Below, piece by piece: positions 3,812-39,444 of a DNA stretch of 64,000 nucleotides. Position 1 is the stretch's first letter, and each line of letters begins with the position of its first letter. Both the position numbers and the translations under genes were made by a program. The notes under the pieces are model-generated. The model was not told the DNA's origin. It ran no database searches and worked only from the letters and a program-made list of their open reading frames with translations. The DNA lies in the IMG/VR virus record IMGVR_UViG_3300046616_000314, positions 62,001 through 126,000 of that record, one strand, 5' to 3'.

Positions 3812-3963
3812 TTTCACAGAAATTACCAATCTGCATGAGTATGCTTATTTGTGTAACGAGAACGATGAAGAAATTCCTCCGAAACATACACCGGAGTTTG
3901 ATCGTTGGATGTACATAGATAAGCTACTATGCGATTACGAGAATTATAATACACGTGGATAAG

Positions 3964-3993
3964 AAAAGGGCTGTGATATTTCGCAGCCCTTTT
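3964..3993. terminator. Intrinsic, potentially bidirectional terminator
   Basis: AAAAGGGCTG-N10-CAGCCCTTTT inverted repeat after the nrd operon. Confidence 0.85.
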
Positions 3994-3996
3994 TCG

Positions 3997-4025
3997 TTGA
4001 CCTGACGATAATTTTCCCGTAGGTT
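3997..4025 (+). promoter_or_regulatory. sigma70-like promoter for ileS
   Basis: TTGACC-N17-TAGGTT about 25 nt upstream of the ATG. Confidence 0.55.
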
Positions 4026-4050
4026 AGAACTTTCCGTTTAAGGCGTAGCT

Positions 4051-6837
4051 ATGACCATCGACTACAAAGATACCATCTTCCTCCCGAAGACAGATTTCCC
4101 CATGAATCGCGTCGCGGATGAAGCTGCTATTTTGGGTGGCATGGCTAACCATTACGCTTTCATGAGCGCGAACAATACCGGGACGCCGAAGTTCGTACTG
4201 CATGATGGACCGCCCTACGCCAACGGCAACCTTCATATGGGTCACGCCCTGAACAAGATCATCAAGGATATGGTGGTCCGTTCCAAGTATGGTCTAGGTT
4301 TTTCTGTCGATTATACGCCCGGCTGGGACTGCCACGGTCTTCCTATCGAGTGGAAGGTTGAACGCGAGCTTATGGAAGCTGGCGACAGCAAGTCCAATTA
4401 CACCGTCATGCAATTCCGTGAAATGTGTCGTGCGGAAGCCCTGAAGTGGGTTGATATCCAGCGCGAGCAATTCAAGAAGCTTGGTGTGCAAGCCAACTGG
4501 GATAATCCCTATCTGTCCACCAATACCGAAGCGGTCATCGCTGACGAACTGCTGAAGATCGCAGAGAGCGGTAAGCTGTATCGCGATCTCAAGCCCGTTC
4601 TGTGGAGCCCGATTGAAAAGACGGCTCTGGCTGAAGCCGAAGTTGACCACAAGGAACTGAACACCAAGCAAATCTGGGTGGGCTTCCCGGTCAAGAGCGG
4701 TTACGTGAACCTCCCCACGGATATGCGCCCCAATTCGGTGTCGGTCTTGATCTGGACGACGACGCCTTGGACCATTCCGTCTAACAAGGCGGTCGCGTTC
4801 AACCCAAAGATCGAATACGGACTGTATAAGCGTCCCGACCATACCGGCGGGGTGATCGTTGCTAAGTTCTATGCCCCTGATAGCTGGACGCTGTTGGGTG
4901 ACGTGAATCCTGCCCAACTGGAACTGTATCATCCGTTGCGCGGGCAAGCGGAACGCTATGACATCACCGTTCCCGTTCTAGAAGCCGATTTCGTGGAAGA
5001 AGGCGTGGGTACGGGGCTGGTGCATATCGCCCCGGAACATGGACCCGACGATTTCGCTGTTTGGAAAAAATATTTCCCACATGATCGCCTGGGCATGACG
5101 GTCGGGTCGGAAGGCGAATGGCAGTTCGACCTTGGATTCCCCTTCGGTGGCGTGAAGGTCGTTGAGGAATACGTCAAGGAAAAGAAAGGCAAGAAAGAAT
5201 ACACTTATTCTTTCAACGCAGCCAATCAGGTTGTGATCGATGTCTTGCGCGGTAATGGTCGCCTGTTCGGTGTAGAACCGATCAAGCTTTCGTATCCGCA
5301 TTCCTGGCGTTCAGGTTCGCCTCTGATCTATCGTGCGACGAAGCAATGGTTCATGAAACTTGATGGTGTTCGCCAGCAAGCCTTGGATTCACTCAAGAAA
5401 GTGACCTTTGTTCCCGATCAACGGCAAGCAAGACTTGAGAATGCCGTTTCAGGGCGTCCAGATTGGCTCCTAAGCCGTCAACGGGTCTGGGGCACGCCTA
5501 TGTGCCTTTTCACCAATAAAGGCTCTGGTGAGCTTCTAATCAACTCTGTGGTCAACGACAACATTCGCCGAGTGTTGGCGCAAGACCCTGATGCTTGGTG
5601 GACAACGCTGATCCCAGAATTCTTTGAAGGTTCTGGGCTGAATCATTACGACTACGAAAAGTGCAACGATGTCCTTGACGTTTGGTTTGACAGTGCTTGT
5701 AGCCTGAACCAAGCGGGTCTAGACGCGCCTGCTGATCTTTATATTGAAGGGTCGGACCAACATCGCGGTTGGTTCGGATCATCCTTGCTGAAGACCATCG
5801 CATCGGATGGTGTGGCGCCGTTTGAAACGTTGATCACGCATGGCTTCGTCCTTGATGGCAAGGGTGAGAAGATGTCCAAGTCCAAGGGCAACGTGATCGA
5901 TCCGCAAACGATCATCGATCAGTATGGTACCGACACGCTGCGTCTCTGGGTCGCCATGAGCGATTGGACGCAGGATGTCCGCGCGAGCGATGAGTCGTTC
6001 AAGACGGCGCATGACGCCTATCGCAAGCTGCGCAACACGCTGAAATATCTGATCGGGGCTACGAAGGATTTCAATCCGTTCGCCATTTCGGGTGGTCCGC
6101 TTGGAAACCATTCGGTCCTGCACGATTTGATGTATAAAGAAATGCAGATGGTGCAGCACAAAGCTCAACACGCCTACGACGAATATCGTTTCAAGGACGT
6201 TGTTAAGTTGATCATGGATTTCTGCACCAACGATCTGTCTTCGTTCTATTTCGATGTTTTCAAAGACACGCTGTATTGTGATCCTTTGGAATCAGCGGAG
6301 CGTCGTCACTATCTTTCTACTCTGTCAGCAATCTATATGATGCTGTCAAATATGTTGATGCCTATCATCCCCTTCACGTGCGAAGAGGGTGCTGATCATT
6401 CACAGAAGGGTCGTTGGATCACGACAAGCCGTTGGTATGTTAGTGAAAACTACGGCTGGGATCGTCGTCGCCTGGACGCCATCAAGGATGTTGTTCGTCG
6501 CGTCAATCTCGCATTGGAAGAAGCGCGCAACAACAAACTGATCGGCTCATCGGCGGAAGCCCACGTAATCGTTCAAGTCACGCCGTACGAAGAAGAATTG
6601 CTGAATGATGAAAGACCATCAGCGGCGATGATCTTCCGTACAAGCCAAGCCACGCTTGAAGTCGTGTACACAAGCCCGTCTGTATTGCAGGTCACAGTTG
6701 AAAAAGCCAAAGGTAAAAAATGCGCCCGAAGCTGGCTTTATAATGAAGGGGTGGGGAACGATAGTGAATACCCGGACATTTCCGAGCGGGATGCTGTCGC
6801 TGTACGCGAGTGGGTCAAGCGAAATGTTTCCGCTTGA
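4051..6837 (+). CDS. ileS: Isoleucyl-tRNA synthetase (bacterial type 1)
   Basis: LHDGPPYANGNLHMGH (HIGH), GWDCHGLPIE, WTTTPWT and GTGLVHIAPEHGPDD (editing domain), EGSDQHRGWF, KMSKS, C-terminal KCARSW. Confidence 0.97.
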   Translation: MTIDYKDTIFLPKTDFPMNRVADEAAILGGMANHYAFMSANNTGTPKFVLHDGPPYANGNLHMGHALNKIIKDMVVRSKYGLGFSVDYTPGWDCHGLPIEWKVERELMEAGDSKSNYTVMQFREMCRAEALKWVDIQREQFKKLGVQANWDNPYLSTNTEAVIADELLKIAESGKLYRDLKPVLWSPIEKTALAEAEVDHKELNTKQIWVGFPVKSGYVNLPTDMRPNSVSVLIWTTTPWTIPSNKAVAFNPKIEYGLYKRPDHTGGVIVAKFYAPDSWTLLGDVNPAQLELYHPLRGQAERYDITVPVLEADFVEEGVGTGLVHIAPEHGPDDFAVWKKYFPHDRLGMTVGSEGEWQFDLGFPFGGVKVVEEYVKEKKGKKEYTYSFNAANQVVIDVLRGNGRLFGVEPIKLSYPHSWRSGSPLIYRATKQWFMKLDGVRQQALDSLKKVTFVPDQRQARLENAVSGRPDWLLSRQRVWGTPMCLFTNKGSGELLINSVVNDNIRRVLAQDPDAWWTTLIPEFFEGSGLNHYDYEKCNDVLDVWFDSACSLNQAGLDAPADLYIEGSDQHRGWFGSSLLKTIASDGVAPFETLITHGFVLDGKGEKMSKSKGNVIDPQTIIDQYGTDTLRLWVAMSDWTQDVRASDESFKTAHDAYRKLRNTLKYLIGATKDFNPFAISGGPLGNHSVLHDLMYKEMQMVQHKAQHAYDEYRFKDVVKLIMDFCTNDLSSFYFDVFKDTLYCDPLESAERRHYLSTLSAIYMMLSNMLMPIIPFTCEEGADHSQKGRWITTSRWYVSENYGWDRRRLDAIKDVVRRVNLALEEARNNKLIGSSAEAHVIVQVTPYEEELLNDERPSAAMIFRTSQATLEVVYTSPSVLQVTVEKAKGKKCARSWLYNEGVGNDSEYPDISERDAVAVREWVKRNVSA

Positions 6838-7291
6838 TATCGTCTCCAAACACGTATTGAGCCGAACCCGTAAGTACGGTGCGGGTCATCCTGACCTGAA
6901 GCTAAACGTTCGCAAGTACCTTGATGCCCATTTTGGGCAATGGTCTTGGCAAGTTCGTACCGATGTTGTCGATTCGGACATGAAGCCTATTAAGCTGGTC
7001 CGCTTCAATTTGAATGGCGGACCCGGTATTGACGTGCGAAAAGAGGTACTTCTTTTCTACGTCAAGTTCACTAAGATGTACCAATTCGATTGGTTGAGTC
7101 TTTCGAGAGATCAAATGCATGTTGTTCGCATAACAAAGCCCGATTTCTATATCTCGACAGAAGTCAACGCATGGTTGGATGAACTGTGTACCGATCAAGG
7201 ATGGGTGTGCCTGGACGAAGGTCGGGATGGCGTCACTGTGTTCTTCTCCAATGAGGATAACGCGGCAACCTTCAAGTTGAAGTACGGATGA
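6824..7291 (+). CDS. FKLK-motif family protein
   Basis: FFSNEDNAATFKLKYG*; start moved to ATG 6824, overlapping the ileS end. Confidence 0.75.
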   Translation: MFPLDIVSKHVLSRTRKYGAGHPDLKLNVRKYLDAHFGQWSWQVRTDVVDSDMKPIKLVRFNLNGGPGIDVRKEVLLFYVKFTKMYQFDWLSLSRDQMHVVRITKPDFYISTEVNAWLDELCTDQGWVCLDEGRDGVTVFFSNEDNAATFKLKYG

Positions 7292-7527
7292 GACCAATCC
7301 CGCGCCATATTCTGTACGTGGATCGGGACAAATCAATTGATCCCGCGACCGGGGTGTTTTTGCCTGAATTCTATAAGTTCATGACGGACCAATATGGAAC
7401 AGCGAGTGGGGCATGGGCACGAGATTATATGTATTATTCTCGCACCGGGGATAACAATAAAATTGTGATCTTCATCTTTAAGGAAGACCCGGAATTCGCA
7501 ATGATGTTTAAGTTGAAATACGGATGA
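7288..7527 (+). CDS. FKLK-motif family protein
   Basis: FKEDPEFAMMFKLKYG*; ATGA overlap. Confidence 0.8.
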   Translation: MRPIPRHILYVDRDKSIDPATGVFLPEFYKFMTDQYGTASGAWARDYMYYSRTGDNNKIVIFIFKEDPEFAMMFKLKYG

Positions 7528-7901
7528 AAAGTCTCTTCGAAGCTATGCGCGAACGCGGATATGAGCCAACCGAAGCTTGTTGTGGTCCTATCCCGCGCGA
7601 CGCGCATGACGCATTTCTATATGAGCGAGTGTATGTCAAAGAAGCTGGTGGACCCCGATCCGTTACGGGTGATCGTGTCTCCCGTTCCAGTGAAGATATT
7701 TTCGATAATCATTGGCTGATAGTTGCATTTGACCAACCAGTCGCCATGAAAAGCGAACGATGGATTCAATGGATTGATTTGATCCAACAAGAGAAATATC
7801 AACCCTTTTTCTTTGATATGCGCAATCAGGCGAAGACAGTCCTCGCCTTTGGCTTTGCTGACGAAGAAGATGCAGTTCTAATGCGGTTGAAAATGCTATG
7901 A
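7524..7901 (+). CDS. FKLK-motif family protein
   Basis: FADEEDAVLMRLKML*; ATGA overlap. Confidence 0.8.
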   Translation: MKSLFEAMRERGYEPTEACCGPIPRDAHDAFLYERVYVKEAGGPRSVTGDRVSRSSEDIFDNHWLIVAFDQPVAMKSERWIQWIDLIQQEKYQPFFFDMRNQAKTVLAFGFADEEDAVLMRLKML

Positions 7902-8206
7902 AGGGTCATCGTATCTATTTCCCAATGAATGCCGGTGGATGCTGGCAGTATTTGGACCCTAGCCTTAGAAATCTAGAATTCACGTCGCCGGGAGCCGATA
8001 CTATTCCCGAGAACGCCGCCATCCTAACCTTTTCTAATTTCGGTACGCAACCGGATGACAGTAAAGAGAATATACGATGGAACGAATTCATGCGATTACA
8101 GGCATCGGGGCATAACGCATGGTTCATTTCGTTTGACACGCCGACGTTTGCTCTAGAGTTTGAAACCGAAGAAGAAGCTTTCAAGTTCAAGTTGAAATTC
8201 GGATGA
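7898..8206 (+). CDS. FKLK-motif family protein
   Basis: FETEEEAFKFKLKFG*; ATGA overlap. Confidence 0.8.
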   Translation: MKGHRIYFPMNAGGCWQYLDPSLRNLEFTSPGADTIPENAAILTFSNFGTQPDDSKENIRWNEFMRLQASGHNAWFISFDTPTFALEFETEEEAFKFKLKFG

Positions 8207-8616
8207 GCCTGCAACATTTTCGGTCTGACGTTAACAAAGAGGTTTTCTTTCTGGAAACCAAGTGGGTAGGGCAAACTGCCACTACCTACGTTATTTCTAT
8301 GGATGACCATGGGAACCGGAGATATTACGCGGTTGTTCCGTTAGAAGATGTAAAAGCACTTGCTAAAACCGATCTGCATTACCACGTTCGGAAAGATTTC
8401 GCAGTCAACGTCAAGATTCCTGTTCCCGAACATAGGGAGACAGGGGTGACGACTTATAGCTTGCTCGCGCCCCATATGTCATGGATCGCCCATAACGTGA
8501 AAACAAAATGGTCGATGACCACTCCGTTTGCCAATAAAAACGTCATGGCTATCAACATGACCTTTTACTTTGGTGACGAAATCGAGGCGGCTGCGTTCAA
8601 GCTGAAATTCGTATGA
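8203..8616 (+). CDS. FKLK-motif family protein
   Basis: FGDEIEAAAFKLKFV*; ATGA overlap. Confidence 0.8.
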   Translation: MSLQHFRSDVNKEVFFLETKWVGQTATTYVISMDDHGNRRYYAVVPLEDVKALAKTDLHYHVRKDFAVNVKIPVPEHRETGVTTYSLLAPHMSWIAHNVKTKWSMTTPFANKNVMAINMTFYFGDEIEAAAFKLKFV

Positions 8617-8945
8617 TTTTGATGGATGTATTAGAAGGCGTTTCGCGCGGAGAAATTCGCGCCCTTGGTCTCATTGAAGAGGATGATGGGCAAGTTCGGT
8701 GTGATTTTTTGAATTACACTCAAAAACTTGACCCATTGCATATAACGACCGATGGTTTCTTCTTAGTGTTAAGCAACGGCGATGATGGATTGTGTACGGG
8801 CACACGTTGGAGTAACATCATTGCGTTTTGTCATTCGTTCAGAGGCAAGATGTATCAATCTAATGACCGAAGAGACCAAGTGTATATAATCTTCGACATG
8901 CCTTCAGAAGAAGAAGCTATGCTATTGAAGTTGAGACTCGGATGA
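8613..8945 (+). CDS. FKLK-motif family protein
   Basis: MPSEEEAMLLKLRLG*; ATGA overlap. Confidence 0.8.
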   Translation: MILMDVLEGVSRGEIRALGLIEEDDGQVRCDFLNYTQKLDPLHITTDGFFLVLSNGDDGLCTGTRWSNIIAFCHSFRGKMYQSNDRRDQVYIIFDMPSEEEAMLLKLRLG

Positions 8946-9292
8946 AACTCGTTGACGCAGTTCCGCATATGTCGCGATACCGGCACGTATTTCCTATGGG
9001 GCGAACACCGGGTAAATTTTTTCTCCTCCATAAGGACAAAGAAGAAAAAATCTCCAATACAATTCACTGGGACAAGGTACGTAAAATCACGGGCAAGCGT
9101 TGGGTGATTTTCGAGTTTGAAAACCGAAACAATTACTTAAAAAATCATTGGTCAGAATTCTCCCGGTATTGTAAGAGCCGGGCTCAGGCTGGTTACATGA
9201 TTGTGGATCGCTATGGAAATAATGTAACGATTGCATTGAATTTCCGCGCGGACGAAGATGCGTCCTATTGCAGATTGAGATTCAGCAAATGA
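8942..9292 (+). CDS. FKLK-motif family protein
   Basis: FRADEDASYCRLRFSK*; ATGA overlap. Confidence 0.75.
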   Translation: MKLVDAVPHMSRYRHVFPMGRTPGKFFLLHKDKEEKISNTIHWDKVRKITGKRWVIFEFENRNNYLKNHWSEFSRYCKSRAQAGYMIVDRYGNNVTIALNFRADEDASYCRLRFSK

Positions 9293-9618
9293 TCCAGCTA
9301 CGCCCCAACGAATTAATTACCGGGTTGATCATCGAAATCGCGTATTACTCGCGGGCAGATGGTACAAAGTACATTCGATATTCGAGTGTGCTAAATTCTA
9401 GAGGCGGACACGATAGACAAGAACTTACTCTATGTAGTCCGTTTGTTGTAAGCATAAAAAATAACAGACACATTGTTGATGATCCGCGTTTTATTGACTT
9501 TGTTGACAAGTTCACCGGAACTGTTGTATATAAGGACTCGACAGATGAAATCTTCATGGATTTTGCAAGTGAAGAAGACATCGTAATGTTCAAGTTTAAA
9601 ATGACAGGGCAATGCTAG
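9289..9618 (+). CDS. FKLK-motif family protein
   Basis: FASEEDIVMFKFKM; start moved to the ATGA overlap at 9289. Confidence 0.75.
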   Translation: MIQLRPNELITGLIIEIAYYSRADGTKYIRYSSVLNSRGGHDRQELTLCSPFVVSIKNNRHIVDDPRFIDFVDKFTGTVVYKDSTDEIFMDFASEEDIVMFKFKMTGQC

Positions 9619-9977
9619 AAGCGCAGCGCATAACAGTACCGACGACAATCCTAGCATATCGTCTATCACCTTGGACGACAGGGTTTTCGCTCACCTATGC
9701 TCAGCGCGATTCTAACCGCAATGGTGTACCCTGCGAAGTCATGGGCGCACACCTAGTCATTTTCCCGATGAAGATACTTTCGGAGATCAAACCGGAGTAT
9801 GAAAAATTTGTCGAGTTTTCGAAAACGTTTCCCGGTGAGATTTATTCGATCAAGCGGTTCTTCACACATGACCTTTCGCCTGGACGTGGCGAGCATATGC
9901 ATTTCTTGCTTTCATTCCCGACCGCTGAAGATGCCGTAATCTTCAAGATGCGTATGAAAGTGGATTACAACCTATGA
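9612..9977 (+). CDS. FKLK-motif family protein
   Basis: FPTAEDAVIFKMRM. Confidence 0.75.
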   Translation: MLEAQRITVPTTILAYRLSPWTTGFSLTYAQRDSNRNGVPCEVMGAHLVIFPMKILSEIKPEYEKFVEFSKTFPGEIYSIKRFFTHDLSPGRGEHMHFLLSFPTAEDAVIFKMRMKVDYNL

Positions 9978-10264
9978 ACGGCGCGGATGAAGTATACGCG
10001 GGTTATGTGGTCGAAATCTCAGATGACGAAATCAGCTATAAACTTAATGCACGCGGAAAGCAAATGCATGTGAGTTATCCATGCAATGAATGCGCCGTTC
10101 TGCGTCTTGATAAATCAACCGCATTGGGAGATTTGGACGTTACAGATTTCAGAAAAACTATGCAAACAATCTCAAGGAAAGCTACGGTATTCTTTGGCGG
10201 ATCATATGTTTTTCATTTCAAGAACCCAGATGATCTTATCCTGCATTGTCTGAAATACTCATGA
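9974..10264 (+). CDS. FKLK-motif family protein (divergent)
   Basis: FKNPDDLILHCLKYS*; ATGA overlap. Confidence 0.7.
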   Translation: MNGADEVYAGYVVEISDDEISYKLNARGKQMHVSYPCNECAVLRLDKSTALGDLDVTDFRKTMQTISRKATVFFGGSYVFHFKNPDDLILHCLKYS

Positions 10265-10641
10265 AACAAGTTACAGCTAAAATCATGAAACTTAGCGAAT
10301 TTGTTGCTCTACACAATCCGCGAGTTTGCGACGGCACGGTGGATTGCTATATCGATGAAGCAACGACTTGTGAGGACGAAGACCCGCGCAACTATTCCTG
10401 TGAACCCATTGCCGATGACGATCTTGAACTAATTGAATATCCTTGTTACACCGCGCATCATTTCACGCATTCTGAAATCTATAGCGACCGCTGGAACAGT
10501 GTGTTCAAAGCCGTCAAGGTGCATAAACTTCCGGCGTATTTTGTGGATTACCATCTAGGCGGTGTTCCCATAGAATCGTGCATTATCTTGGCGCACAAAA
10601 GCGACGAAGATGGCATGTTGTTTAAATTGAAACTCACATGA
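10261..10641 (+). CDS. FKLK-motif family protein
   Basis: HKSDEDGMLFKLKLT*; start moved to the ATGA overlap. Confidence 0.75.
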   Translation: MKQVTAKIMKLSEFVALHNPRVCDGTVDCYIDEATTCEDEDPRNYSCEPIADDDLELIEYPCYTAHHFTHSEIYSDRWNSVFKAVKVHKLPAYFVDYHLGGVPIESCIILAHKSDEDGMLFKLKLT

Positions 10642-10946
10642 CTGTTCACAAAGGCTGGAAAGTCACCATTGAACCGACCGATGTCGCCGGGATCGAATGG
10701 GAAGCGCATCGTTATGGTGGTCCGCAAATAATCACGGGTGATTGCTTGTATACACCCATTTTTGACGTGAGAGATATAACGCGATGGAATGCATTTTTGA
10801 ATTTTGCTCATACCTATGAGAGAACAATTTGGCAAATTGCGCGGGATCATGGTGAAGCCCCCGATACCTATTATGCTCCTGTTGGCTATGTGATCGATTT
10901 CGCTTCTGAAGAAGAAGCGTTGTTGTATAAGTTGAAACACGAATGA
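10638..10946 (+). CDS. FKLK-motif family protein
   Basis: FASEEEALLYKLKHE*. Confidence 0.8.
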   Translation: MTVHKGWKVTIEPTDVAGIEWEAHRYGGPQIITGDCLYTPIFDVRDITRWNAFLNFAHTYERTIWQIARDHGEAPDTYYAPVGYVIDFASEEEALLYKLKHE

Positions 10947-11425
10947 TCCCTGTATTTGACAACGACAGTCTCAAGCCAGATATCACGCGCTTCGTAATAG
11001 AGAAGACGAACCTTCCTGCACGTCATAACAGTGCAGTCGTATATGTCTTAAATCAAGTGGACTATTCCCCTGGCATATATTCTTTAGATCAGCAAACGTC
11101 TAAGATTGAATTCTTTCGCGTTGGCGTAATCAAACACACGAATATGAAGAAATTCCAATCAATGGAATTCGATACGGATGTTGCTGGACAACATGAAGTA
11201 GAACTATTCAACAAAGAATTAACAGCACTCGACGCAAGCTATCATCACCCCGTGAATATTGGAATAATGACCAATTGGCGATCTGAAGTCATAAACTGGA
11301 TCATCGAAAACATTGACGGTGCTTGGACGCTTATGTCACTTCTGCATGAGAATCGGAAATGGGGTTGCACTTTTTATTTTGCATCTGACGAAGATGCGGC
11401 TACAATAAAATTTAAGTTTGGTTAA
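10943..11425 (+). CDS. FKLK-motif family protein
   Basis: FYFASDEDAATIKFKFG*. Confidence 0.8.
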   Translation: MIPVFDNDSLKPDITRFVIEKTNLPARHNSAVVYVLNQVDYSPGIYSLDQQTSKIEFFRVGVIKHTNMKKFQSMEFDTDVAGQHEVELFNKELTALDASYHHPVNIGIMTNWRSEVINWIIENIDGAWTLMSLLHENRKWGCTFYFASDEDAATIKFKFG

Positions 11426-11888
11426 AGCGTATTTTTACGAGATTTTTATGAAGCCCAGTCATGCTCTCATTGGTGGTGAATTAATTCCAATTCAATTTTA
11501 TGAACTGGAAAGCCCCAATCAATTCGGAACCTATCTTGTCCCATTCGCCAAAGCGTTGTTGGTCGAACAGACCCCGTGTCTGAACGTGTACGACATCAAG
11601 GGCACGAAGTTCCTTGTGCTTGCTGGATCGGCGCCAGAGACCCCGTTCAACGTCATCGTAGCCGAATTCAACGAGCGTGGTTTCGATCTGGGTTTGGAAA
11701 TCCCTAGCGTTGAAACGCGCAACATTCTGTCGATGTTCACACTGTTGGAAGTCGATGACGCTTTTGAAGTAGAATTCTACGAAGAAGAGGTTATCCTGTC
11801 GAGCATGGGCGATATCGTCATGGAAGATGTCAGAATCGCCATTGAATGTGATTCCGATCCATACTTCACGGATGAGCCGCCATTTTGA
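11418..11888 (+). CDS. Hypothetical acidic protein
   Basis: ORF fills the gap in a coupled operon; no FKLK motif; start uncertain. Confidence 0.65.
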   Translation: MVKAYFYEIFMKPSHALIGGELIPIQFYELESPNQFGTYLVPFAKALLVEQTPCLNVYDIKGTKFLVLAGSAPETPFNVIVAEFNERGFDLGLEIPSVETRNILSMFTLLEVDDAFEVEFYEEEVILSSMGDIVMEDVRIAIECDSDPYFTDEPPF

Positions 11889-12253
11889 TCCTCGCTGATT
11901 ATATCAAAAAGCATTTCGCGGATGGATATAATAGTCTCAAGGTAGGGACTACGACTGATCCTGCGTTGATTATTGAACACGGAAATAAATGGTGTTACAA
12001 CGTCGATAACGACGCAGATGCGGATTTTCAGAAAGCCGCTTACTATTCGCATTACTGCTTTCCAAGCGGGACAGTTTTCAATGATCAATGGAAGCGATTG
12101 TATGAATACATCGTTGCCCGAGACATTGAAATATTTTTCATTAGAGTCCACGATTACTACGCTACAATTAATAACCCTCGACAAATATCAGTAGTTGTCA
12201 TTCCGCACGATACAGAAGAAGAGGCGGTATTTGCTAAGGTAAAGGTCGGATGA
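11885..12253 (+). CDS. FKLK-motif family protein (PHDTEEEA subfamily)
   Basis: PHDTEEEAVFAKVKVG*; close paralog of the next gene. Confidence 0.75.
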   Translation: MILADYIKKHFADGYNSLKVGTTTDPALIIEHGNKWCYNVDNDADADFQKAAYYSHYCFPSGTVFNDQWKRLYEYIVARDIEIFFIRVHDYYATINNPRQISVVVIPHDTEEEAVFAKVKVG

Positions 12254-12615
12254 TCCTTACTGAATACATCGATACCATCATGTACGATTACAACAGCATC
12301 AGGGAAGGGAGACCGGACGACCCGTTTTCAATGCCATCGGTGTCAAATATAATTTACCGCTATACCAAAACACATATTAATCCCGACACCGTAGATCATG
12401 CCTGTTATTCCCATTATGTTTTCCAGTCTGGAACGCTAAGAGGCTCCCGATGGGAACGACTACATTCGTATGTTTTAGGAAGAAAATCTAAAATATATTT
12501 TATTACTCGCTATGCTTCCGACGTTAATTTCATACACTATCAACAAGAAGCCGTTATCATCGTTCCACACGATACGGAAGAAGAAGCATTCTTCGCTAGA
12601 GTTAAAAACGGATGA
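12250..12615 (+). CDS. FKLK-motif family protein (PHDTEEEA subfamily)
   Basis: PHDTEEEAFFARVKNG*. Confidence 0.75.
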   Translation: MILTEYIDTIMYDYNSIREGRPDDPFSMPSVSNIIYRYTKTHINPDTVDHACYSHYVFQSGTLRGSRWERLHSYVLGRKSKIYFITRYASDVNFIHYQQEAVIIVPHDTEEEAFFARVKNG

Positions 12616-13313
12616 TCTACCATCTTGAACCCATCGGTGATTGGTCTACGGTAGCTGATGAAGATCGCTTTAGCGGTTTTCTAGACGGCGACCGCCGAGC
12701 ACTACATAATCCAAAGTGGCGCGGAAACGTGCGCGATGCTTTCCGTAATACATCGCACCAATACAATTTCTTTTTCCTTCAAGACGTAAAAGATCGTCGT
12801 TCAACGTACACGGCTAAATCTCTATTTGAAGTGAGTGATTACCTTCTTGACTATACATTCGATATGTCAGTACCAGACTCAATCAACGTGGTGTTCACGA
12901 ACAATTTCGGTACTGATCGCGTCGCAATGACACCCTGGATCATTGCTCATAGAACGTCGCACACAATCCACGAACACTTGGATGATGGCAAGGGTGTAGA
13001 ATACGTTCAAATATTACACGATATGTGTATTCATATCAAAAATATCAATAATTGCCATCATCGATTGAATAAAGACTTGCGCCAAGTCTTGAAATTCCGC
13101 AGCGCAAAGAAACAGCTTACGCGATATGGCGAATTGTTTCATGAAATATTCGCTCAATACTTGATACAAGGAAGCGTGACATTCATCAAACTCCCAAACA
13201 CCGTTCCTGATGCGGATGTAATCAATTCGATTACTAGAAAATATGCACCGAAGATCAATGCCTCTATCAAGAGACTATTAGATCAATCTGTTGGTAACAT
13301 TTATATTCTTTAG
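12612..13313 (+). CDS. Hypothetical protein with atypical zincin-like motif
   Basis: MTPWIIAHRTSH and ELFHEIFAQYL. Confidence 0.6.
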   Translation: MIYHLEPIGDWSTVADEDRFSGFLDGDRRALHNPKWRGNVRDAFRNTSHQYNFFFLQDVKDRRSTYTAKSLFEVSDYLLDYTFDMSVPDSINVVFTNNFGTDRVAMTPWIIAHRTSHTIHEHLDDGKGVEYVQILHDMCIHIKNINNCHHRLNKDLRQVLKFRSAKKQLTRYGELFHEIFAQYLIQGSVTFIKLPNTVPDADVINSITRKYAPKINASIKRLLDQSVGNIYIL

Positions 13314-15053: not shown

Positions 15054-15316
15054 CGGTATTCACAACCTTTGAACCAATGCGTTTGCCCAACTCTTTTAAG
15101 ATCGACTTTGAAAAGAGCAATGAACACACCGGTTGCAGGAACAGTGAGCGCAATTATTGCCAATGCCACCATATAGTCTTTATTGAAAATACAAGTTACG
15201 ATCAATCCAATCATAACCGAGAGCATGGTAGCATGAAATGAAGTATTCATATACAAATCGCGCAGAGCATCTTCCGCACAAGTACGAACATCTTCGATTT
15301 CATACGGTTTAGGCAT
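15050..15316 (-). CDS. Small membrane protein
   Basis: Two hydrophobic segments. Confidence 0.65.
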   Translation of the reverse strand: MPKPYEIEDVRTCAEDALRDLYMNTSFHATMLSVMIGLIVTCIFNKDYMVALAIIALTVPATGVFIALFKVDLKRVGQTHWFKGCEYR

Positions 15317-15548
15317 TGCTCATCCATTTCAACTTGAACAAGATCATGTCTTCTGCGTTCGCAAACTCGATGAAATCGTGAAAGTATCCTTCAGTATACC
15401 AATACCAACCCTTAGTCAAGTTAGTACGACACCAATCCTCAACGTCTTCATTGAGATACGTTTTTTCTATAAGTCTACCGTGACCTTTTGCAGCCGTTTG
15501 AACAAACATTGCATAGGTCAAATAAGAGGGAAGGTTGATCCTAAACAT
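15309..15548 (-). CDS. FKLK-motif family protein
   Basis: EDWCRTN..KGW; FANAEDMILFKLKW. Confidence 0.8.
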   Translation of the reverse strand: MFRINLPSYLTYAMFVQTAAKGHGRLIEKTYLNEDVEDWCRTNLTKGWYWYTEGYFHDFIEFANAEDMILFKLKWMSNA

Positions 15549-15798
15549 GATTCAATTCGTCAGGAATGTCGCGCGTGAGTGCAGAGACACAATAACTTAA
15601 ACCGGCTGCTACGGCGAAAAAACAGGTCACGATTAAAAGAATGGCGGTGTGCATCAAAGCCCAAATACCAATCGGAACAAATATAACCAAAAGAATGAAG
15701 CCGACACAATACTCACGAAGTTGTGTGCTGGCGGTAACTTCGGCTGTACGTCTTTTGTATTTAAGAGTTGCGTGTCTTAATTCTTGCATCGAAGCCAT
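15541..15798 (-). CDS. Small membrane protein
   Basis: Two hydrophobic segments. Confidence 0.6.
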   Translation of the reverse strand: MASMQELRHATLKYKRRTAEVTASTQLREYCVGFILLVIFVPIGIWALMHTAILLIVTCFFAVAAGLSYCVSALTRDIPDELNHV

Positions 15799-15799
15799 A

Positions 15800-16000
15800 T
15801 CAACACCACTTCAATTTGAAAGTGATCATTTCTTCGTCGCTATGGAAATTGAGAACTAAGTTTCCATTCACGTCTTCGAACGGAGGATCAATTTTGATAT
15901 CATTGTCGATAAGCCATGCAACAACGTCTGGGTTGATAGCCATAGTTGTTTTGTAATTCCAGATATGATGTTCTGGAACGATGACTTGTTTGTTGCTCAT
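15800..16000 (-). CDS. FKLK-motif family protein (minimal, 66 aa)
   Basis: FHSDEEMITFKLKWC*. Confidence 0.8.
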   Translation of the reverse strand: MSNKQVIVPEHHIWNYKTTMAINPDVVAWLIDNDIKIDPPFEDVNGNLVLNFHSDEEMITFKLKWC

Positions 16001-16344
16001 AAGTATTTCAACTTGAAAGCGGTATACGCTTCATCATTCGGAAAGATGAATTCGTTGTTGCCCGTCTTTTCGATTGTAGTTTTGACATCATGGGCTTTCA
16101 ACCACTGACGAAACTCATTAGTCAATTTCGGCGGATCAACCCAACGATGCTCAGGCGCGCTCATACGTGGGTCAGCCCATATATAAATGAGACCCAATGC
16201 CATATGAATTTTGTCTTCCCAACGCCAATAATCGGGAGGCGGAATACCCGTCATGTCCAATGTCCCATCGGTATTGGTTGAACTTTTCAAAAAATGTTTC
16301 CATTCGGTTTCGGAATACAGCCGAGGATAGGGATTCGTTTTCAT
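15997..16344 (-). CDS. FKLK-motif family protein
   Basis: FPNDEAYTAFKLKYL*. Confidence 0.8.
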   Translation of the reverse strand: MKTNPYPRLYSETEWKHFLKSSTNTDGTLDMTGIPPPDYWRWEDKIHMALGLIYIWADPRMSAPEHRWVDPPKLTNEFRQWLKAHDVKTTIEKTGNNEFIFPNDEAYTAFKLKYL

Positions 16345-16598
16345 GAGCCGAAACGCATCTTGAAGGCTACGGCATTTTCGAGCGTGGTGAAAGTAAGAAT
16401 GTATCGCCCACGTGCCGTTTCGGGTGCGCGATCAAAGAAATAAAAGAATTGGATTTCGCAGGCTTGCATCCACGCTGCCATGTCATCGGTAACAGGACCG
16501 CGCACGGCATTGCGAGGAATTTCCATACCAAATGGGAAAACATGCCCGTGGTGAGAGAATGCGGTGATCTCGAATAATGCAGGTTCAGTCATTGCCAT
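16341..16598 (-). CDS. FKLK-motif family protein
   Basis: FTTLENAVAFKMRFGS*. Confidence 0.75.
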   Translation of the reverse strand: MAMTEPALFEITAFSHHGHVFPFGMEIPRNAVRGPVTDDMAAWMQACEIQFFYFFDRAPETARGRYILTFTTLENAVAFKMRFGS

Positions 16599-16861
16599 TT
16601 CAACTTGAACATCACACGGTCTTCATCCGACGTGAAAGAAATCGAGGGATAATTCGACCAGCCGTTGTCATACGTCAGCCAAAACGTGGAATAACGAATT
16701 TCATTGTCTAGAAGATAGTCCAGCACTTTCGCCGAAAGCAACGGACGCATTAAGCCCGCGCCTCCGCGTTGTGTTACAAGTCGGAAAGCAATAGTCATGG
16801 CAAACGGATACCCGGTCTTGAATTCCGGTATATCCATGAACGCTTCAATCTTATCGGTCAC
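16589..16861 (-). CDS. FKLK-motif family protein
   Basis: FTSDEDRVMFKLKWQ*. Confidence 0.8.
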   Translation of the reverse strand: MTDKIEAFMDIPEFKTGYPFAMTIAFRLVTQRGGAGLMRPLLSAKVLDYLLDNEIRYSTFWLTYDNGWSNYPSISFTSDEDRVMFKLKWQ

Positions 16862-17490
16862 AGTGTCTTCCGCTCATAGTAGCGTAGAAGCGTTCTAATC
16901 GCTTCCTTGCCCTCTGTAGACAGGTCACGGCTACCGATGCCCGTCCACACGCCATGGGGCTCTGGTGGGCTTTCTAGAGCGTTCCAGCGCACACGACTGT
17001 TCAGACCATTCCAGACGTACCATTGTTCGGTTAGTTGATCGAAGACGTAGCATTCGCACGCTGCACCATTGACGCGATCAATGAACATTTGAACAGCCCA
17101 AGCCGTTCCGCCTGATACCATACCATCTTCAATATCAGCCACGGCGTATACTCGTTCGGTATCTTTGACTTGATAGTAATTACGGCGCAACAGATTACGA
17201 ACGTAAAGATATTTGTCAGGAATGTTGGCGGGCGTATTGAGTTGAAAACTCTTTCGAGTCTTCACACCAGCGGCTTTGTATCGCGCATTCATGTTCTTCG
17301 CAGCGGTATGACACGCCTTGTTCGCCGCTTCTAATTGCTCATCGGTCAGCCGGGCAACTTCGGCTTCGGGAACATAGACCTTTGCATCAGCGAAAGACCA
17401 ATGGACGACTTCATGTCCAGCCGTACCGGCACACATGCCCCATTGGGCATCGGCGCCTTTAGCTCCACCACTGAGACAGATCGGTTTCAT
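16858..17490 (-). CDS. SLOG-superfamily (DprA/YpsA/MoCo-carrier-like) nucleotide-binding protein
   Basis: LSGGAKGADAQW, LLRRNYYQV, SGGTAWAV, TGIGSR motifs. Confidence 0.65.
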   Translation of the reverse strand: MKPICLSGGAKGADAQWGMCAGTAGHEVVHWSFADAKVYVPEAEVARLTDEQLEAANKACHTAAKNMNARYKAAGVKTRKSFQLNTPANIPDKYLYVRNLLRRNYYQVKDTERVYAVADIEDGMVSGGTAWAVQMFIDRVNGAACECYVFDQLTEQWYVWNGLNSRVRWNALESPPEPHGVWTGIGSRDLSTEGKEAIRTLLRYYERKTL

Positions 17491-17921
17491 TTGCTTTTAG
17501 TGATTCCGAGGACGGGAAGATCATTCCAATTTTTCAACATGCAGCTTTCCGTATCGAAATAGACAATCGGCTTATTCGAGGCGGTGAAACGATTCTTGAG
17601 CATGGTGATCATCATGTTGGTTTTACCCATCCCACGACCAGCCATCATGGCAAAACCAGTTTTCCACCGAGTGGCATACATCGTGCTCAGCCGCGCGGAA
17701 TATTTCAGCTTGAAGGTAGCTGCATCTTCGCTGTTCTTGATTTTGACCTGAACAACGTTGGTATAATAAAACTCATCAAGGCGAGTATTCTTCTCCCATG
17801 ATCCCCGAGTCTTGACGCGACCTTGCGTGCAGTTTTCAGCCAACCACGTTCGCAATTCTGCCGTGGCAGATGTTGGGGATGAATCTTTTAGATCATAGGT
17901 GAAAGTATGCCACTTACTCAT
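17487..17921 (-). CDS. FKLK-motif domain fused to a P-loop-like fragment
   Basis: IKNSEDAATFKLKYS, then AGRGMGKT and IVYFDTE. Confidence 0.65.
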   Translation of the reverse strand: MSKWHTFTYDLKDSSPTSATAELRTWLAENCTQGRVKTRGSWEKNTRLDEFYYTNVVQVKIKNSEDAATFKLKYSARLSTMYATRWKTGFAMMAGRGMGKTNMMITMLKNRFTASNKPIVYFDTESCMLKNWNDLPVLGITKSK

Positions 17922-18198
17922 TGATGATCTTCACTTTGATAGCGGTTGCTCTGAAGGAGTAAAACTTGCTGTATTCGAATTGATTGAGTTTCAAACGCAA
18001 AATGAACAAATCTTCTTCCGAACCTTCAACACGAACTTCGGGATTTATGTAGGACGCTCTCTCGTTGGCATCTATGTTAAAATCACCGATGTTTGCGCAA
18101 AATGCTACCAACGACTCTCGCCAGCACCAGAAAATATTATTCCTGGCGGCTTCTCGTCCACAGATGACCAGACACGATTGCATAAACCAATTTACCAA
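17914..18198 (-). CDS. FKLK-motif family protein (divergent)
   Basis: EGSEEDLFILRLKL. Confidence 0.6.
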   Translation of the reverse strand: MVNWFMQSCLVICGREAARNNIFWCWRESLVAFCANIGDFNIDANERASYINPEVRVEGSEEDLFILRLKLNQFEYSKFYSFRATAIKVKIINE

Positions 18199-18213
18199 AA
18201 ATTTACGACAAAA

Positions 18214-18444
18214 TCAACGTCCAAAAATGCTGATCGCGTGGGACCAACGTAGCATGACCAGGGCTCGTTGCTCGTCGGTTAAATCCTTGGCTAGGATGAC
18301 ACCATATACCGATTTGTCATATACCTTCACTGTAGGAAGATTTTCGGCAAACCAAGCTAAGATGGGAGCCGCGATACCATTCCATGCCTCAATGCTACGG
18401 ATTAACGGTCCCGGTGTGAGTTTGAGATCATAGAGTTTTTGCAT
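18214..18444 (-). CDS. FKLK-motif family protein (divergent)
   Basis: LAWFAEN; LTDEQRALVMLRWS. Confidence 0.55.
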   Translation of the reverse strand: MQKLYDLKLTPGPLIRSIEAWNGIAAPILAWFAENLPTVKVYDKSVYGVILAKDLTDEQRALVMLRWSHAISIFGR

Positions 18445-18763
18445 TGATTTCCGTCAGGGGAAACGAATAGAACTTCCCGTTGGTATGTTGGAAAGAGAAT
18501 TTCTCATATTTGATTTTGAACATAACTGCATCTTCGGGAGCCTTGAACTTGATCCGAATGCAATGCTCTGTACGAGAGGCACCATCACCAAATCGTGCAA
18601 GTTGCTTATGCATATTGATATTGATGCGTCCCTGCGTTTCAGCACCCAAAAACTCGCGCAGCATCGTAACAACAAGGCGATATTTCGCAATGTCTCGTGG
18701 ATAATACGATTGTTCGTTCAGGACATAAACATCAAGCGCAACAATGGAACCCCAATTAGACAT
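18428..18763 (-). CDS. FKLK-motif family protein
   Basis: FKAPEDAVMFKIKYE. Confidence 0.75.
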   Translation of the reverse strand: MSNWGSIVALDVYVLNEQSYYPRDIAKYRLVVTMLREFLGAETQGRININMHKQLARFGDGASRTEHCIRIKFKAPEDAVMFKIKYEKFSFQHTNGKFYSFPLTEINAKTL

Positions 18764-19082
18764 TTAGCGTCCCCATGAATTTATTGATGCCAGTAGGGTC
18801 CGTGACATCGAACATGATTGTACAAGTGACATCATCGGAATTGCTGTAAACAAAATACACTCGTGGATCATTAACGATTCGATCACTGAACTTCATCTTG
18901 AACAAGATCATATTCTCTTCTGTATCGAAATACAGAGCCATCAAGCGCGTATATTCTTGCGTGATTTCGCGCCCGAAACCCGAAACGCCAGGGTTAGCAG
19001 CACGCCACGCCGTAACGTCGTCCAGATTTTCATCGGTAGACAACACGTTGACTTCGTATTCAGTACGAATGAGTTTATTCAT
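18756..19082 (-). CDS. FKLK-motif family protein
   Basis: FDTEENMILFKMKFS. Confidence 0.75.
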   Translation of the reverse strand: MNKLIRTEYEVNVLSTDENLDDVTAWRAANPGVSGFGREITQEYTRLMALYFDTEENMILFKMKFSDRIVNDPRVYFVYSNSDDVTCTIMFDVTDPTGINKFMGTLNV

Positions 19083-19297
19083 CGAACCATCTTATAGAAA
19101 ACGCTTCCGGGCATTTGAAACAGGCTTGTGTAGTCAGCCGTAACCAAATGGCTAAACTTCAGCAAGAAAACCGTTGCGCTTTCATCGTCATAGAATATCA
19201 CGTGATTGCTACCAAGAGTATTGAACGGAGTCATGGTTTCTTTCAACCACGCATCAATCGTGCTTTGGTGTTTTTCAAGGAAAGCGTAGATTTTCAT
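19079..19297 (-). CDS. FKLK-motif family protein
   Basis: FYDDESATVFLLKFS. Confidence 0.75.
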   Translation of the reverse strand: MKIYAFLEKHQSTIDAWLKETMTPFNTLGSNHVIFYDDESATVFLLKFSHLVTADYTSLFQMPGSVFYKMVR

Positions 19298-39435: not shown

Positions 39436-39444
39436 GCAGTTCTC

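What the first reader, a model, noticed from the sequence alone, without database searches (positions are those of the whole stretch)
6824..12615. Fifteen FKLK genes chained by stop-start overlaps, with a recurrent DNA junction (TTYAAGYTGAARTWCGGATGA)
Almost every junction is ATGA. The last codons (F-K-L-K-Y/F-G-stop) give a near-identical ~21-nt DNA string at 7271-7291, 7507-7527 and 8186-8206 and at the minus-strand gene end at 56448. The string is at once protein motif, stop codon and the next gene's start. Inference: recombination between these short homologies would add, delete or shuffle whole genes in frame and already coupled, giving a gene accordion or cassette array with no integrase.
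Basis: partly seen in the sequence, partly recalled or inferred. Interest (0 to 1): 0.6.

Follow-up and report, generated by a model that had tools for sequence, protein, structure and literature searches.

The report
Giant paralog family in huge phage
The repeated DNA junction is real, but it is best explained as the conserved tail of one small protein family, copied about 270 times in a 561-kb T4-like phage, overlapping the start codon of the next gene; nothing here shows that it acts as a recombination site.

Summary
Window 6824-12615 holds 16 co-directional small genes behind a phage IleRS gene. Fifteen end in an EEDA..FKLK(F/Y/W)(G/L) tail. Thirteen of the 16 junctions, counting the one into the next gene, are ATGA. 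The interpretation needs a wider frame. The window lies in a 561,116-bp T4-like virus record. The array is one divergent branch of a family of about 270 ORFs covering 15% of that genome. The family has no Pfam or PHROGs match. About 20 copies occur in complete 363-365-kb phages. The tail is the last helix of a small alpha/beta domain. Synonymous sites in the motif are not neutral. The deviant ones either build the next gene's start codon (terminal CTA or GGA before TGA; AAA before TGG) or lie one mutation from a commonly exchanged residue. In other phages the same protein tail is written in different DNA. Paralogs are old, at most 51% amino-acid identity. The longest perfect DNA identity between two junctions in the array is 11 nt. 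Closest paralogs are often neighbours, so the arrays grew by ancient tandem duplication. Motif-guided recombination is neither shown nor excluded.

The parts
3960..4035 (+). Terminator-like hairpin with T-run, followed directly by a sigma-70-like promoter (TTGACC, 17 nt, TAGGTT), upstream of IleRS. It is the likely early promoter of the whole operon and resembles a T4 PeSL in layout.
   Evidence: Read directly from the sequence. Similar composites occur elsewhere in the genome. The scan found no promoter or terminator excess inside the array.
4051..6837 (+). Phage-encoded isoleucyl-tRNA synthetase (928 aa), first gene of the operon.
   Evidence: ORF. Homologs carry tRNA-synt_1 and Anticodon_1 domains; the best non-self hit is 47% identical and the named hits are alphaproteobacterial at 40-42%.
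6824..7291 (+). Family gene 1 (155 aa from ATG 6824), tail ...FKLKYG. Overlaps the IleRS stop by 14 nt.
   Evidence: HMM E=1.7e-10.
7288..7527 (+). Family gene 2 (79 aa), tail FKLKYG, ATGA junctions on both sides.
7524..7901 (+). Family gene 3 (125 aa), tail MRLKML, ATGA junction.
7898..8206 (+). Family gene 4 (102 aa), tail FKLKFG, ATGA junction. An AlphaFold2 model was made for this gene.
   Evidence: In the model the C-terminal helix-strand-strand-helix has pLDDT 70-84.
8203..8616 (+). Family gene 5 (137 aa), tail FKLKFV, ATGA junction.
8613..8945 (+). Family gene 6 (110 aa), tail LKLRLG, ATGA junction.
8942..9292 (+). Family gene 7 (116 aa), tail CRLRFSK, ATGA junction at 9289-9292.
9289..9618 (+). 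Family gene 8 (in-frame ATG at 9289), tail FKFKMTGQC. 7-nt overlap with gene 9.
9612..9977 (+). Family gene 9 (121 aa), motif FKMRMK followed by 5 more residues, ATGA junction.
9974..10264 (+). Family gene 10 (96 aa), degenerate tail HCLKYS, ATGA junction at 10261-10264. It did not reach the family HMM threshold; it is placed in the family by alignment.
10261..10641 (+). Family gene 11 (in-frame ATG at 10261), tail FKLKLT, ATGA junction.
10638..10946 (+). Family gene 12 (102 aa), tail YKLKHE, ATGA junction.
10943..11425 (+). Family gene 13 (160 aa), tail IKFKFG, TAA stop. 8-nt overlap with a TTG start.
11418..11888 (+). Gene 14 (156 aa). It has no family motif and is an unrelated insert in the array. 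TTGA junction to gene 15.
   Evidence: absent from the HMM hits.
11885..12253 (+). Family gene 15 (122 aa), tail AKVKVG. Old tandem duplicate of gene 16 (47 of 122 residues identical).
12250..12615 (+). Family gene 16 (121 aa), tail ARVKNG, ATGA junction to the next gene.
12612..13313 (+). Last gene of the operon (233 aa). Not a family member. It is convergent with the minus-strand gene at 13310-14200.
   Evidence: no Pfam or PHROGs hit.
15309..19846 (-). Minus-strand stretch with about 11 further family ORFs, for example 15309-15548, 15800-16000, 15997-16344, 16341-16598, 16589-16861 and 18428-19846.
   Evidence: HMM hits at genome 77309-81846; DNA motif at 15997.
37723..42544 (-). Minus-strand stretch with 8 family ORFs (37723-38172, 38169-38633, 38618-39130, 39445-40146, 40143-40838, 40838-41332, 41432-41803, 42173-42544).
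   Evidence: HMM hits at genome 99723-104544.
56239..57758 (-). Minus-strand cluster of 4 family ORFs (56239-56451, 56448-56831, 56711-57055, 57351-57758).
63090..64000 (+). Start of another plus-strand family array that runs off the window end (genome 125090-132452).

Best explanation
The array is one translationally coupled early operon of a T4-like huge phage: IleRS, then 16 small genes, then one more gene. Fifteen of the small genes are divergent members of a very large phage-specific paralog family, about 270 ORFs and 15% of the 561-kb genome. Each member is a small alpha/beta domain whose last helix reads s-E-E-D-A-x-x-F-K-L-K-(W/F/Y) and usually ends the protein. The recurrent DNA string results from two ordinary constraints laid on top of each other. 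The first is purifying selection on that C-terminal helix at the protein level. The second is selection for a stop-start overlap, which fixes the last sense codon as NNA before TGA (CTA or GGA, giving ATGA) and favours AAA before TGG (giving an ATG inside K-W). The arrays arose by ancient local tandem duplication followed by deep divergence. Shown here: the family, its size, its fold topology, the junction architecture, the codon pattern, the age of the copies and the adjacency of closest paralogs. Inferred: early expression from host-type promoters, coupling by termination-reinitiation, and a role as a diversified set of host-directed binding proteins (takeover or anti-defence). In that model the conserved acidic/basic helix contacts a common partner and the variable N-terminal part and loop give specificity.
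For: Family and scale. The iterated HMM finds 271 ORFs at E<=1e-3 and 247 at E<=1e-5, with none in reversed or shuffled ORFs; a non-iterated HMM finds 235. An independent six-frame search gives 302 candidates, and 148 of the 150 scored pass. Family ORFs cover 84,626 bp, 15.1% of the genome.

Membership of the window array. hhalign of the window array against canonical members gives 97.1% probability, E=6e-11.

Fold. The AF2 model of a canonical member has pLDDT 82 with order b-b-b-a-b-b-a, and the motif is the last helix. Window gene 4 shows the same C-terminal a-b-b-a at pLDDT 70-84.

Protein-level conservation. Family arrays in other viral contigs with GC 34-52% keep the peptide but write it in their own codons, for example TTT AAA TTR AGR TGG. 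1239 cluster representatives in public data match at E<=1e-3.

Start-codon selection. The terminal Leu codon is CTA in 59 of 100 cases against an 11% background (p=6e-31). The terminal Gly codon is GGA in 17 of 28 against 13%. K73 is AAA in 59% against 40% (p=6e-9). F70 and K71 match the genome's usual usage. ATGA sits at the stop of 43% of family genes against 12.6% of other genes (odds ratio 5.3, p=1.5e-20). TGA is the stop in 65% against 31%.

Age and origin. Maximum paralog identity is about 51%, and the best hit is the adjacent gene in 46 of 236 cases against 1.7 expected.

Operon and timing. There is no promoter or terminator excess inside the array. A terminator plus TTGACC-17-TAGGTT promoter lies upstream of IleRS, and TTGAC-type promoters lie ahead of other arrays.

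T4-like identity. A gp23 capsid gene is present, a gp13 family hit appears in a contig carrying the same proteins, and a late-promoter-like xTAAATA lies upstream of 21 of 127 long ORFs against 0.2% at random positions.

Literature. ATGA coupling by termination-reinitiation is established in bacteria (PMC6728339, abstract).
Against: Leu at column 72 is TTG or CTG in 76% of cases against 50% genome-wide (p=1e-12). The figure is 84% in members with a coupled downstream gene and 56% in uncoupled ones (p=4e-4). Frequent L/M exchange at this column (ATG is one step from TTG and CTG) explains part of this. It does not explain the coupled/uncoupled difference, so some extra nucleotide-level constraint, or a subfamily effect, remains unexplained. 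Adjacent genes share synonymous codons in F-K-L-K slightly more often than distant pairs do (55.5% against 49.3%, about 2.5 sd), which could be a trace of gene conversion. No expression, coupling or binding data exist. The functional part of the statement is inference. The fold searches gave only generic ferredoxin/KH/ACT-like matches at Z<=4.4.
Confidence: 0.7

Rival explanations
1. The conserved junction string is a recombination substrate. Unequal or ectopic exchange between copies adds, deletes or shuffles whole genes, in frame and already coupled, giving an integrase-free accordion or cassette array. It may act alongside the best explanation, as the mechanism by which the tandem duplications arose.
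For: Closest paralogs are neighbours far more often than chance (46 of 236 against 1.7). Copy number differs about 10-fold between this phage and complete 363-365-kb phages carrying the family. The uniform junction means any motif-to-motif exchange keeps both reading frames, which follows directly. The genome has a RecA/UvsX-like recombinase and no tyrosine integrase. Short conserved elements are reported to mediate gene shuffling in T4-type phages (PMC2839356, PMC4122927). Adjacent genes show a slight excess of shared synonymous codons in the motif.
Against: Perfect identity between junctions is short: at most 11 nt in this array (median 6), and genome-wide a median of 5 nt with 20 nt or more in 48 of 36,585 pairs. 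From my own knowledge, this is below the roughly 20-30 bp usually needed for efficient homologous exchange. No near-identical copies exist anywhere in the genome, so no recent expansion is visible. The deviant synonymous sites are explained by start-codon formation and neighbouring-residue exchange. The DNA string is not conserved between phages. Contigs from run SRR26076614 carrying the same proteins show the same gene order over two 20-kb stretches, although they may come from the same population.
Confidence: 0.2
2. The junction carries an RNA-level signal beyond the start codon. Examples would be a shared binding site for a translational repressor or an endoribonuclease, in the manner of T4 RegA or RegB, or a reinitiation enhancer. 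Such a signal would let the phage switch the whole family on or off together.
For: There is a G-rich periodic pattern at -12, -9 and -4/-3 relative to the ATGA start in family junctions (G in 60-71%), which non-family ATGA junctions lack. The YTG excess at column 72 is stronger where a downstream gene is coupled (84% against 56%, p=4e-4). Canonical Shine-Dalgarno 4-mers are rarer at family junctions (11%) than at other ATGA junctions (22%), so some other signal could be in use.
Against: The pattern coincides with codon positions of conserved residues (K/R, L/M, W), so it may be a by-product of the peptide. Other phages use different bases at these sites. No RegA or RegB homolog was looked for. 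There are no expression data.
Confidence: 0.08
3. Artefact: the repeats come from mis-assembly of a repetitive region, or from spurious ORF calls.
For: The source is a metagenome-derived record with linear ends.
Against: The copies are deeply divergent (20-50% amino-acid identity), so there are no collapsed or duplicated identical repeats. Independent gene calls on Logan contigs give the same small genes with 4-nt overlaps. The family occurs in many unrelated contigs. Reversed and shuffled controls give zero HMM hits.
Confidence: 0.02

Closest known systems
PeSL (promoter-early stem-loop) cassettes of T4-type phages (Arbiol et al. 2010, PMC2839356; Comeau et al. 2014, PMC4122927)
   Same: A T4-like phage. 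Short conserved DNA elements recur at the borders of small, variable, mostly uncharacterised early genes, and are proposed as points of homologous exchange that add, delete or swap whole genes without a site-specific recombinase.
   Different: PeSLs are intergenic regulatory elements, a terminator stem-loop plus an early promoter. The FKLK string is coding, has no intergenic space, and shows no promoter or hairpin. Its perfect identity between copies is only 5-11 nt. A PeSL-like composite does exist here, but upstream of IleRS, not between the family genes.
Lineage-specific expansions in jumbo phages, e.g. about 35 copies of a zinc ribbon in Bacillus phage G (Iyer et al. 2021, PMC7824862)
   Same: One small domain multiplied within a very large phage genome, function unknown, likely tied to host interaction or regulation.
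   Different: The scale differs: about 270 copies and 15% of the genome here, whereas the review copies 'unprecedented'. The fold is different, and the genes are arranged in long translationally coupled arrays.
Poxvirus gene accordions and the multigene families of African swine fever virus and giant viruses (from my own knowledge)
   Same: Tandem paralog arrays in large DNA viruses that expand and contract and are linked to host antagonism.
   Different: Accordions are defined by recent, near-identical copies whose number varies within populations. Here all copies are old (at most 51% identity) and no population variation could be examined.
Translational coupling by termination-reinitiation at ATGA/TGATG overlaps (Huber et al. 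2019, PMC6728339)
   Same: 4-nt stop-start overlaps between co-directional genes. This genome uses ATGA at 12.6% of non-family gene ends too.
   Different: Here the overlap is built into a conserved protein tail, so one peptide motif repeatedly supplies the start codon (CTA/GGA + TGA, or AAA + TGG). Coupling itself has not been measured.
Integron gene-cassette arrays
   Same: Serial arrays of small promoterless genes behind one promoter.
   Different: There is no integrase and no attC-like imperfect inverted repeats; the genes overlap, leaving no intergenic sites. The genes are paralogs rather than unrelated cassettes.

Membership tests
FKLKW-tail paralog family of this phage (defined here by HMM) | Core of about 55 aa: helix with W-C/L-x-x-N/H, then a strand, a variable loop, a strand ending in F, and a terminal helix s-E-E-D-A-x-x-F-K-L-K-W/F/Y. 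| tested here: met
   13 of the 16 array ORFs pass the HMM at E from 6.7e-4 to 3.6e-11. Genes 10 and 16 are placed by alignment and tail regex. hhalign of the array against canonical members gives 97.1% probability. Gene 14 is not a member.
Translationally coupled operon (termination-reinitiation type) | Co-directional genes with -4 or -1 nt stop-start overlaps and no internal promoters or terminators. | tested here: met
   13 of 16 junctions are ATGA and the rest are 4-8-nt overlaps. Promoter and terminator counts are not above shuffles.
Translationally coupled operon (termination-reinitiation type) | Downstream translation depends on upstream termination. | not testable with these tools
   Needs reporter assays or ribosome profiling.
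PeSL-type shuffling element | Intergenic composite of a stem-loop terminator and an early promoter flanking the mobile genes. | tested here: not met
   The junctions have no intergenic DNA, and no hairpin or promoter excess. The only such composite lies upstream of IleRS.
PeSL-type shuffling element | Indels or replacements between close relatives with breakpoints in the element. | not testable with these tools
   No relative closer than 47% IleRS identity was found.
Gene accordion | Recent, near-identical tandem copies. | tested here: not met
   Maximum pairwise identity among about 270 paralogs is about 51% amino acids. Genes 15 and 16 are 39% identical.
Gene accordion | Copy number varies within or between closely related populations. 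| not testable with these tools
   Only distant phages are available (21-23 copies against about 270). Contigs from SRR26076614 show the same order.
Integron cassette array | Tyrosine integrase (IntI) and attC recombination sites. | tested here: not met
   No PF00589 match in the 561-kb genome, while the control genomes all match. The genes overlap, leaving no room for attC.
T4-like (gp23-type) myovirus | gp23-type major capsid protein, T4 core genes, and TATAAATA-type late promoters. | tested here: met
   PF07068 match at E=7.8e-78. A gp13 family hit in a contig carrying the same proteins. xTAAATA upstream of 21 of 127 long ORFs against 0.2% at random positions.

The most novel reading that the evidence does not exclude
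A single, so far unannotated small-domain family has been amplified to about 270 diverged copies, roughly a quarter of all genes, in a 561-kb T4-like phage. This would account for about 85 kb of its excess size over 360-kb phages that carry the family. It would be the largest paralog repertoire seen in a phage. The family would work as a diversified set of early host-directed binders: a constant C-terminal helix engages one common partner and the variable N-terminal part and loop recognise many targets. The peptide tail that doubles as the next gene's start codon would make any motif-to-motif exchange viable, so the family could expand unusually easily.
Probability: 0.2. Interest if true: 0.8.

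Novelty: new variant of a known kind. Interest (0 to 1): 0.55.

Why it matters
Why some phages reach half a megabase is an open question. Here 15% of a 561-kb genome is one uncharacterised family arranged in coupled operons, about ten times more copies than in 360-kb phages that also carry it. That points to paralog amplification, not only gene acquisition, as a route to huge phage genomes. It also defines a large, testable set of small early proteins, with more than 1200 cluster representatives in public data and no Pfam or PHROGs entry. The case also shows how a protein motif and a translational signal can share the same bases and look like a DNA repeat element. That is a useful caution when scanning genomes for mobile or recombination signals.

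Tried and rejected
1. Pfam and PHROGs scans of window members and of 81 canonical members gave no family.
3. The word-based protein search with the family profile found only the phage's own proteins. The exhaustive profile search was therefore used once.
4. The search for close relatives to compare array order failed. An IleRS-anchored scan of viral contigs found none. The metagenome scan gave 39% identity at best. The protein search gave 47% at best. The contexts of two distant IleRS homologs (L029, L030) hold only 3-5 family genes and are not syntenic.
5. Three contigs carrying P0147 looked different by gene calls but are 100% identical DNA, so they offer no natural variation to exploit.
8. 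Fold searches (Foldseek PDB and BFVD, VIA-align wide, ESM Atlas) and a PDB profile search gave only generic ferredoxin/KH/ACT/RRM-like matches (Z<=4.4) or uncharacterised phage proteins.
9. I first read the TTC and AAG excess at F70 and K71 as DNA-level constraint. I rejected this after comparing with the genome's non-family codon usage: family genes simply have weaker codon bias elsewhere.
10. A Shine-Dalgarno explanation for the junction bases was rejected. Canonical SD 4-mers are rarer at family junctions than at other ATGA junctions.
11. The Lys and Leu tRNA genes among the arrays are not specific to the motif. The phage has 36 tRNAs covering most amino acids.

Full report
**Observation**

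The stretch 6824-12615 holds 16 co-directional ORFs directly behind a 928-aa isoleucyl-tRNA synthetase gene at 4051-6837.
- Gene 1 starts at ATG 6824, inside the last codons of IleRS.
- Fifteen of the 16 end in a tail of the type s-E-E-(D/E)-A-x-x-F-K-L-K-(F/Y)-(G) followed by a stop. Gene 14 (11418-11888) does not.
- With in-frame ATGs chosen at 9289 and 10261, 13 of the 16 junctions, counting the one into the next gene at 12612, are ATGA. The others are a TTGA, a 7-nt overlap and an 8-nt overlap.
With up to 3 mismatches it matches 11 times in the window against 0.03 expected.
- One qualification: the 22-nt copies are 77-91% identical, and the longest uninterrupted identity between any two junctions of the array is 11 nt, with a median of 6.

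**Where the window lies**

The window is bases 62001-126000 of a 561,116-bp IMG/VR virus record, 97% complete and 48% GC. It is a T4-like huge phage.
- It has a gp23-type capsid gene at E=7.8e-78.
- A gp13-family gene is called on a contig carrying the same proteins.
- A late-promoter-like xTAAATA lies within 30 nt upstream of 21 of 127 long ORFs, against 0.2% of random positions.
- It has a RecA/UvsX-like gene and no tyrosine integrase, and 36 tRNA genes.
- The nearest named IleRS proteins are alphaproteobacterial, at 40-42% identity.

**What the genes are**

A regex on ORF ends, followed by an iterated HMM, shows that the array is a small part of one very large family.
- The HMM finds 271 ORFs at E<=1e-3 and 247 at E<=1e-5. 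Reversed or shuffled ORFs give none. A non-iterated model gives 235.
- The independent six-frame search finds 302 candidates, and 148 of the 150 scored pass.
- Family ORFs cover 84.6 kb, or 15.1% of the genome. Median length is 94 aa.
- The largest arrays are at genome 0-6 kb, 125-136 kb, 355-387 kb and 544-553 kb.
- The commonest tail is FKLKWL, not FKLKFG.
- The window array is a divergent, longer branch. hhalign against canonical members gives 97.1% probability, E=6e-11.
- The conserved core is about 55 residues: a helix with W-C-x-x-N, a strand, a variable loop, a strand ending in F, and the terminal helix.
- AlphaFold2 models a canonical member at pLDDT 82 with order b-b-b-a-b-b-a. Window gene 4 shows the same C-terminal a-b-b-a at pLDDT 70-84, although the whole model is weak at 62.
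- No Pfam or PHROGs family matches. Structure searches give only generic two-layer alpha/beta matches, or uncharacterised phage proteins.
- The family is widespread. 1239 cluster representatives match at E<=1e-3.
- Arrays occur in unrelated viral and metagenome contigs. Small clusters lie near the IleRS genes of two distant large contigs.
- Two complete phages of 363 and 365 kb have 21-23 matches each. The focal phage has about ten times more.
- A review of jumbo phages calls a 35-copy expansion in phage G 'unprecedented' (PMC7824862).

**Why the DNA string recurs**

- Against the family's own background several columns look biased.
- Against the genome's non-family usage, F70 (TTC) and K71 (AAG) are ordinary, with p=0.37 and p=0.88.
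- The sites that remain deviant:

| Site | Observed | Genome background | p |
|---|---|---|---|
| Terminal Leu codon = CTA | 59 of 100 | 11% | 6e-31 |
| Terminal Gly codon = GGA | 17 of 28 | 13% | not computed |
| K73 = AAA | 59% | 40% | 6e-9 |
| L72 = TTG or CTG | 76% | 50% | 1e-12 |
| R71 = AGG or CGG | 32 of 52 | 15% | 1e-14 |

- The first three create the next gene's start codon. NNA before TGA gives ATGA, and AAA before TGG gives an ATG inside K-W that lies in the same frame as the ATGA.
- The last two sit one mutation from the residues these columns commonly exchange with: Met ATG at column 72 and Lys AAG at column 71.
- ATGA sits at the stop of 43% of family genes against 12.6% of other genes. 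TGA is the stop in 65% against 31% (odds ratio 5.3, p=1.5e-20).
- In other phages the same peptide is written with their own codons, TTT AAA TTR AGR TGG in AT-rich contigs. No DNA element is conserved across phages.
- The string is therefore a protein motif overlapped by a translational signal.
- Coupling at ATGA overlaps by termination-reinitiation is established in bacteria (PMC6728339).
- One residue of doubt remains. The YTG excess is stronger in members with a coupled downstream gene, 84% against 56%, p=4e-4.

**The recombination idea**

Evidence in its favour:
- Closest paralogs are adjacent far more often than chance, 46 of 236 against 1.7 expected.
- Copy number differs tenfold between phages.
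- Any motif-to-motif exchange would keep both reading frames.
- T4-type phages are reported to shuffle small genes through short conserved PeSL elements (PMC2839356, PMC4122927).

Evidence against a special or active role:
- The median longest perfect match between the 3' ends of two members is 5 nt. Only 0.9% of pairs share 15 nt or more, and 48 of 36,585 share 20 nt or more.
- No pair of paralogs exceeds about 51% amino-acid identity. The tandem pair of genes 15 and 16 is 39% identical.
- Adjacent genes share synonymous codons in the motif only slightly more than distant ones, 52.6% against 49.1%.
- Contigs from another assembly that carry the same proteins have the same gene order over two 20-kb stretches.

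The arrays therefore look like the product of ancient tandem duplication and long divergence. The motif may have served as microhomology in those events, but nothing here shows it.

The decisive comparison could not be made. No relative closer than 47% IleRS identity was found.

**Operon and timing**

- No promoter-like or terminator-like sites above chance lie inside the array.
- Upstream of IleRS there is a hairpin with a T-run followed at once by TTGACC-17 nt-TAGGTT.
- Similar TTGAC-type promoters, some behind hairpins, precede other arrays.
- By analogy with T4 (my own knowledge), this suggests early transcription by host RNA polymerase. That fits a role in host takeover or counter-defence.
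- ADP-ribosyltransferase genes of the Alt type lie near family arrays, both in this window and in other contigs.
- The function itself is inference. The nearly invariant exposed charges of the last helix (E-E-D and K-x-K), together with a variable N-terminal part and loop, suggest a constant contact surface and variable specificity.

**Verdict**

The thing itself is an unusually large lineage-specific expansion of an unannotated phage protein family, arranged in coupled operons. That is more interesting than the junction string that led to it.

Noticed in passing
window 3960-4035: A terminator-like hairpin with a T-run, followed immediately by a sigma-70-like promoter (TTGACC, 17 nt, TAGGTT), upstream of IleRS. 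The layout matches the PeSL elements of T4-type phages. Several similar composites occur elsewhere in the genome (e.g. genome 29559, 224034, 253680, 542558).
   Followed up: partly
whole genome (G000); e.g. upstream of long ORFs: A late-promoter-like motif (A/C/T)TAAATA lies within 30 nt upstream of 21 of 127 ORFs of 300 aa or more, against 0.2% of random positions. Together with the gp23 capsid gene at genome 335099-336073, this marks a T4-like phage of 561 kb.
   Followed up: partly
window 4051-6837: Phage-encoded IleRS. The best non-self homologs are only 44-47% identical and sit on unnamed contigs, one of 569,661 bp in an NCBI assembly (L029). Named hits are alphaproteobacteria (Parvibaculum, Aestuariivirga, Pseudovibrio) at 40-42%, which hints at the host group.
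   Followed up: partly
window 27-3558 and 3570-3812: Ribonucleotide reductase large and small subunits, followed by a small glutaredoxin/NrdH-like ORF (CxxC near its N-terminus) just upstream of the IleRS promoter. A family-like ORF (2219-2461) sits between the two reductase genes.
   Followed up: no
window 44644-46230; L015 7097-7735; L016 6975-10466; L029 6629-7753: ART-PolyVal (Alt-like ADP-ribosyltransferase) genes recur close to family arrays in this phage and in unrelated contigs that carry the family.
   Followed up: no
genome 3940-5093, 7936-8110 and 547938-553835 (L011, L013): tRNA genes are interspersed with the family arrays at both genome ends: 36 tRNAs in all, including all five Leu isoacceptors and both Lys. 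tRNA-Leu(UAG) reads CUA, the otherwise rare codon that ends 59 family genes. The set covers most amino acids, so a specific link is not shown.
   Followed up: partly
family genes genome-wide: Family genes have lower GC (45.7% against 48.5%) and weaker codon bias (e.g. Lys AAG 44% against 60%) than the rest of the genome.
   Followed up: no
P0025, P0026, P0038 and similar (other metagenomes): In other phages, proteins of 140-200 aa carry two family domains in one chain, as if two neighbouring genes had fused. In this genome some members are also 160-340 aa.
   Followed up: no
P0006 (876 aa, other metagenome): The top profile hit is a long protein with 10 tandem repeats that match only the N-terminal half of the family core (F-x-D-W-C-x-x-H-G-G-x-L-P). 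It is probably a different, helicase-associated-domain-like repeat. The resemblance is unexplained.
   Followed up: no
genome 362250-386480 (L009, L010): The largest block holds about 85 family genes in two convergent arrays, plus strand 362-369 kb and minus strand 369-386 kb, meeting near 369.0-369.3 kb. Gaps of 150-340 nt inside the arrays were not checked for decayed copies.
   Followed up: no
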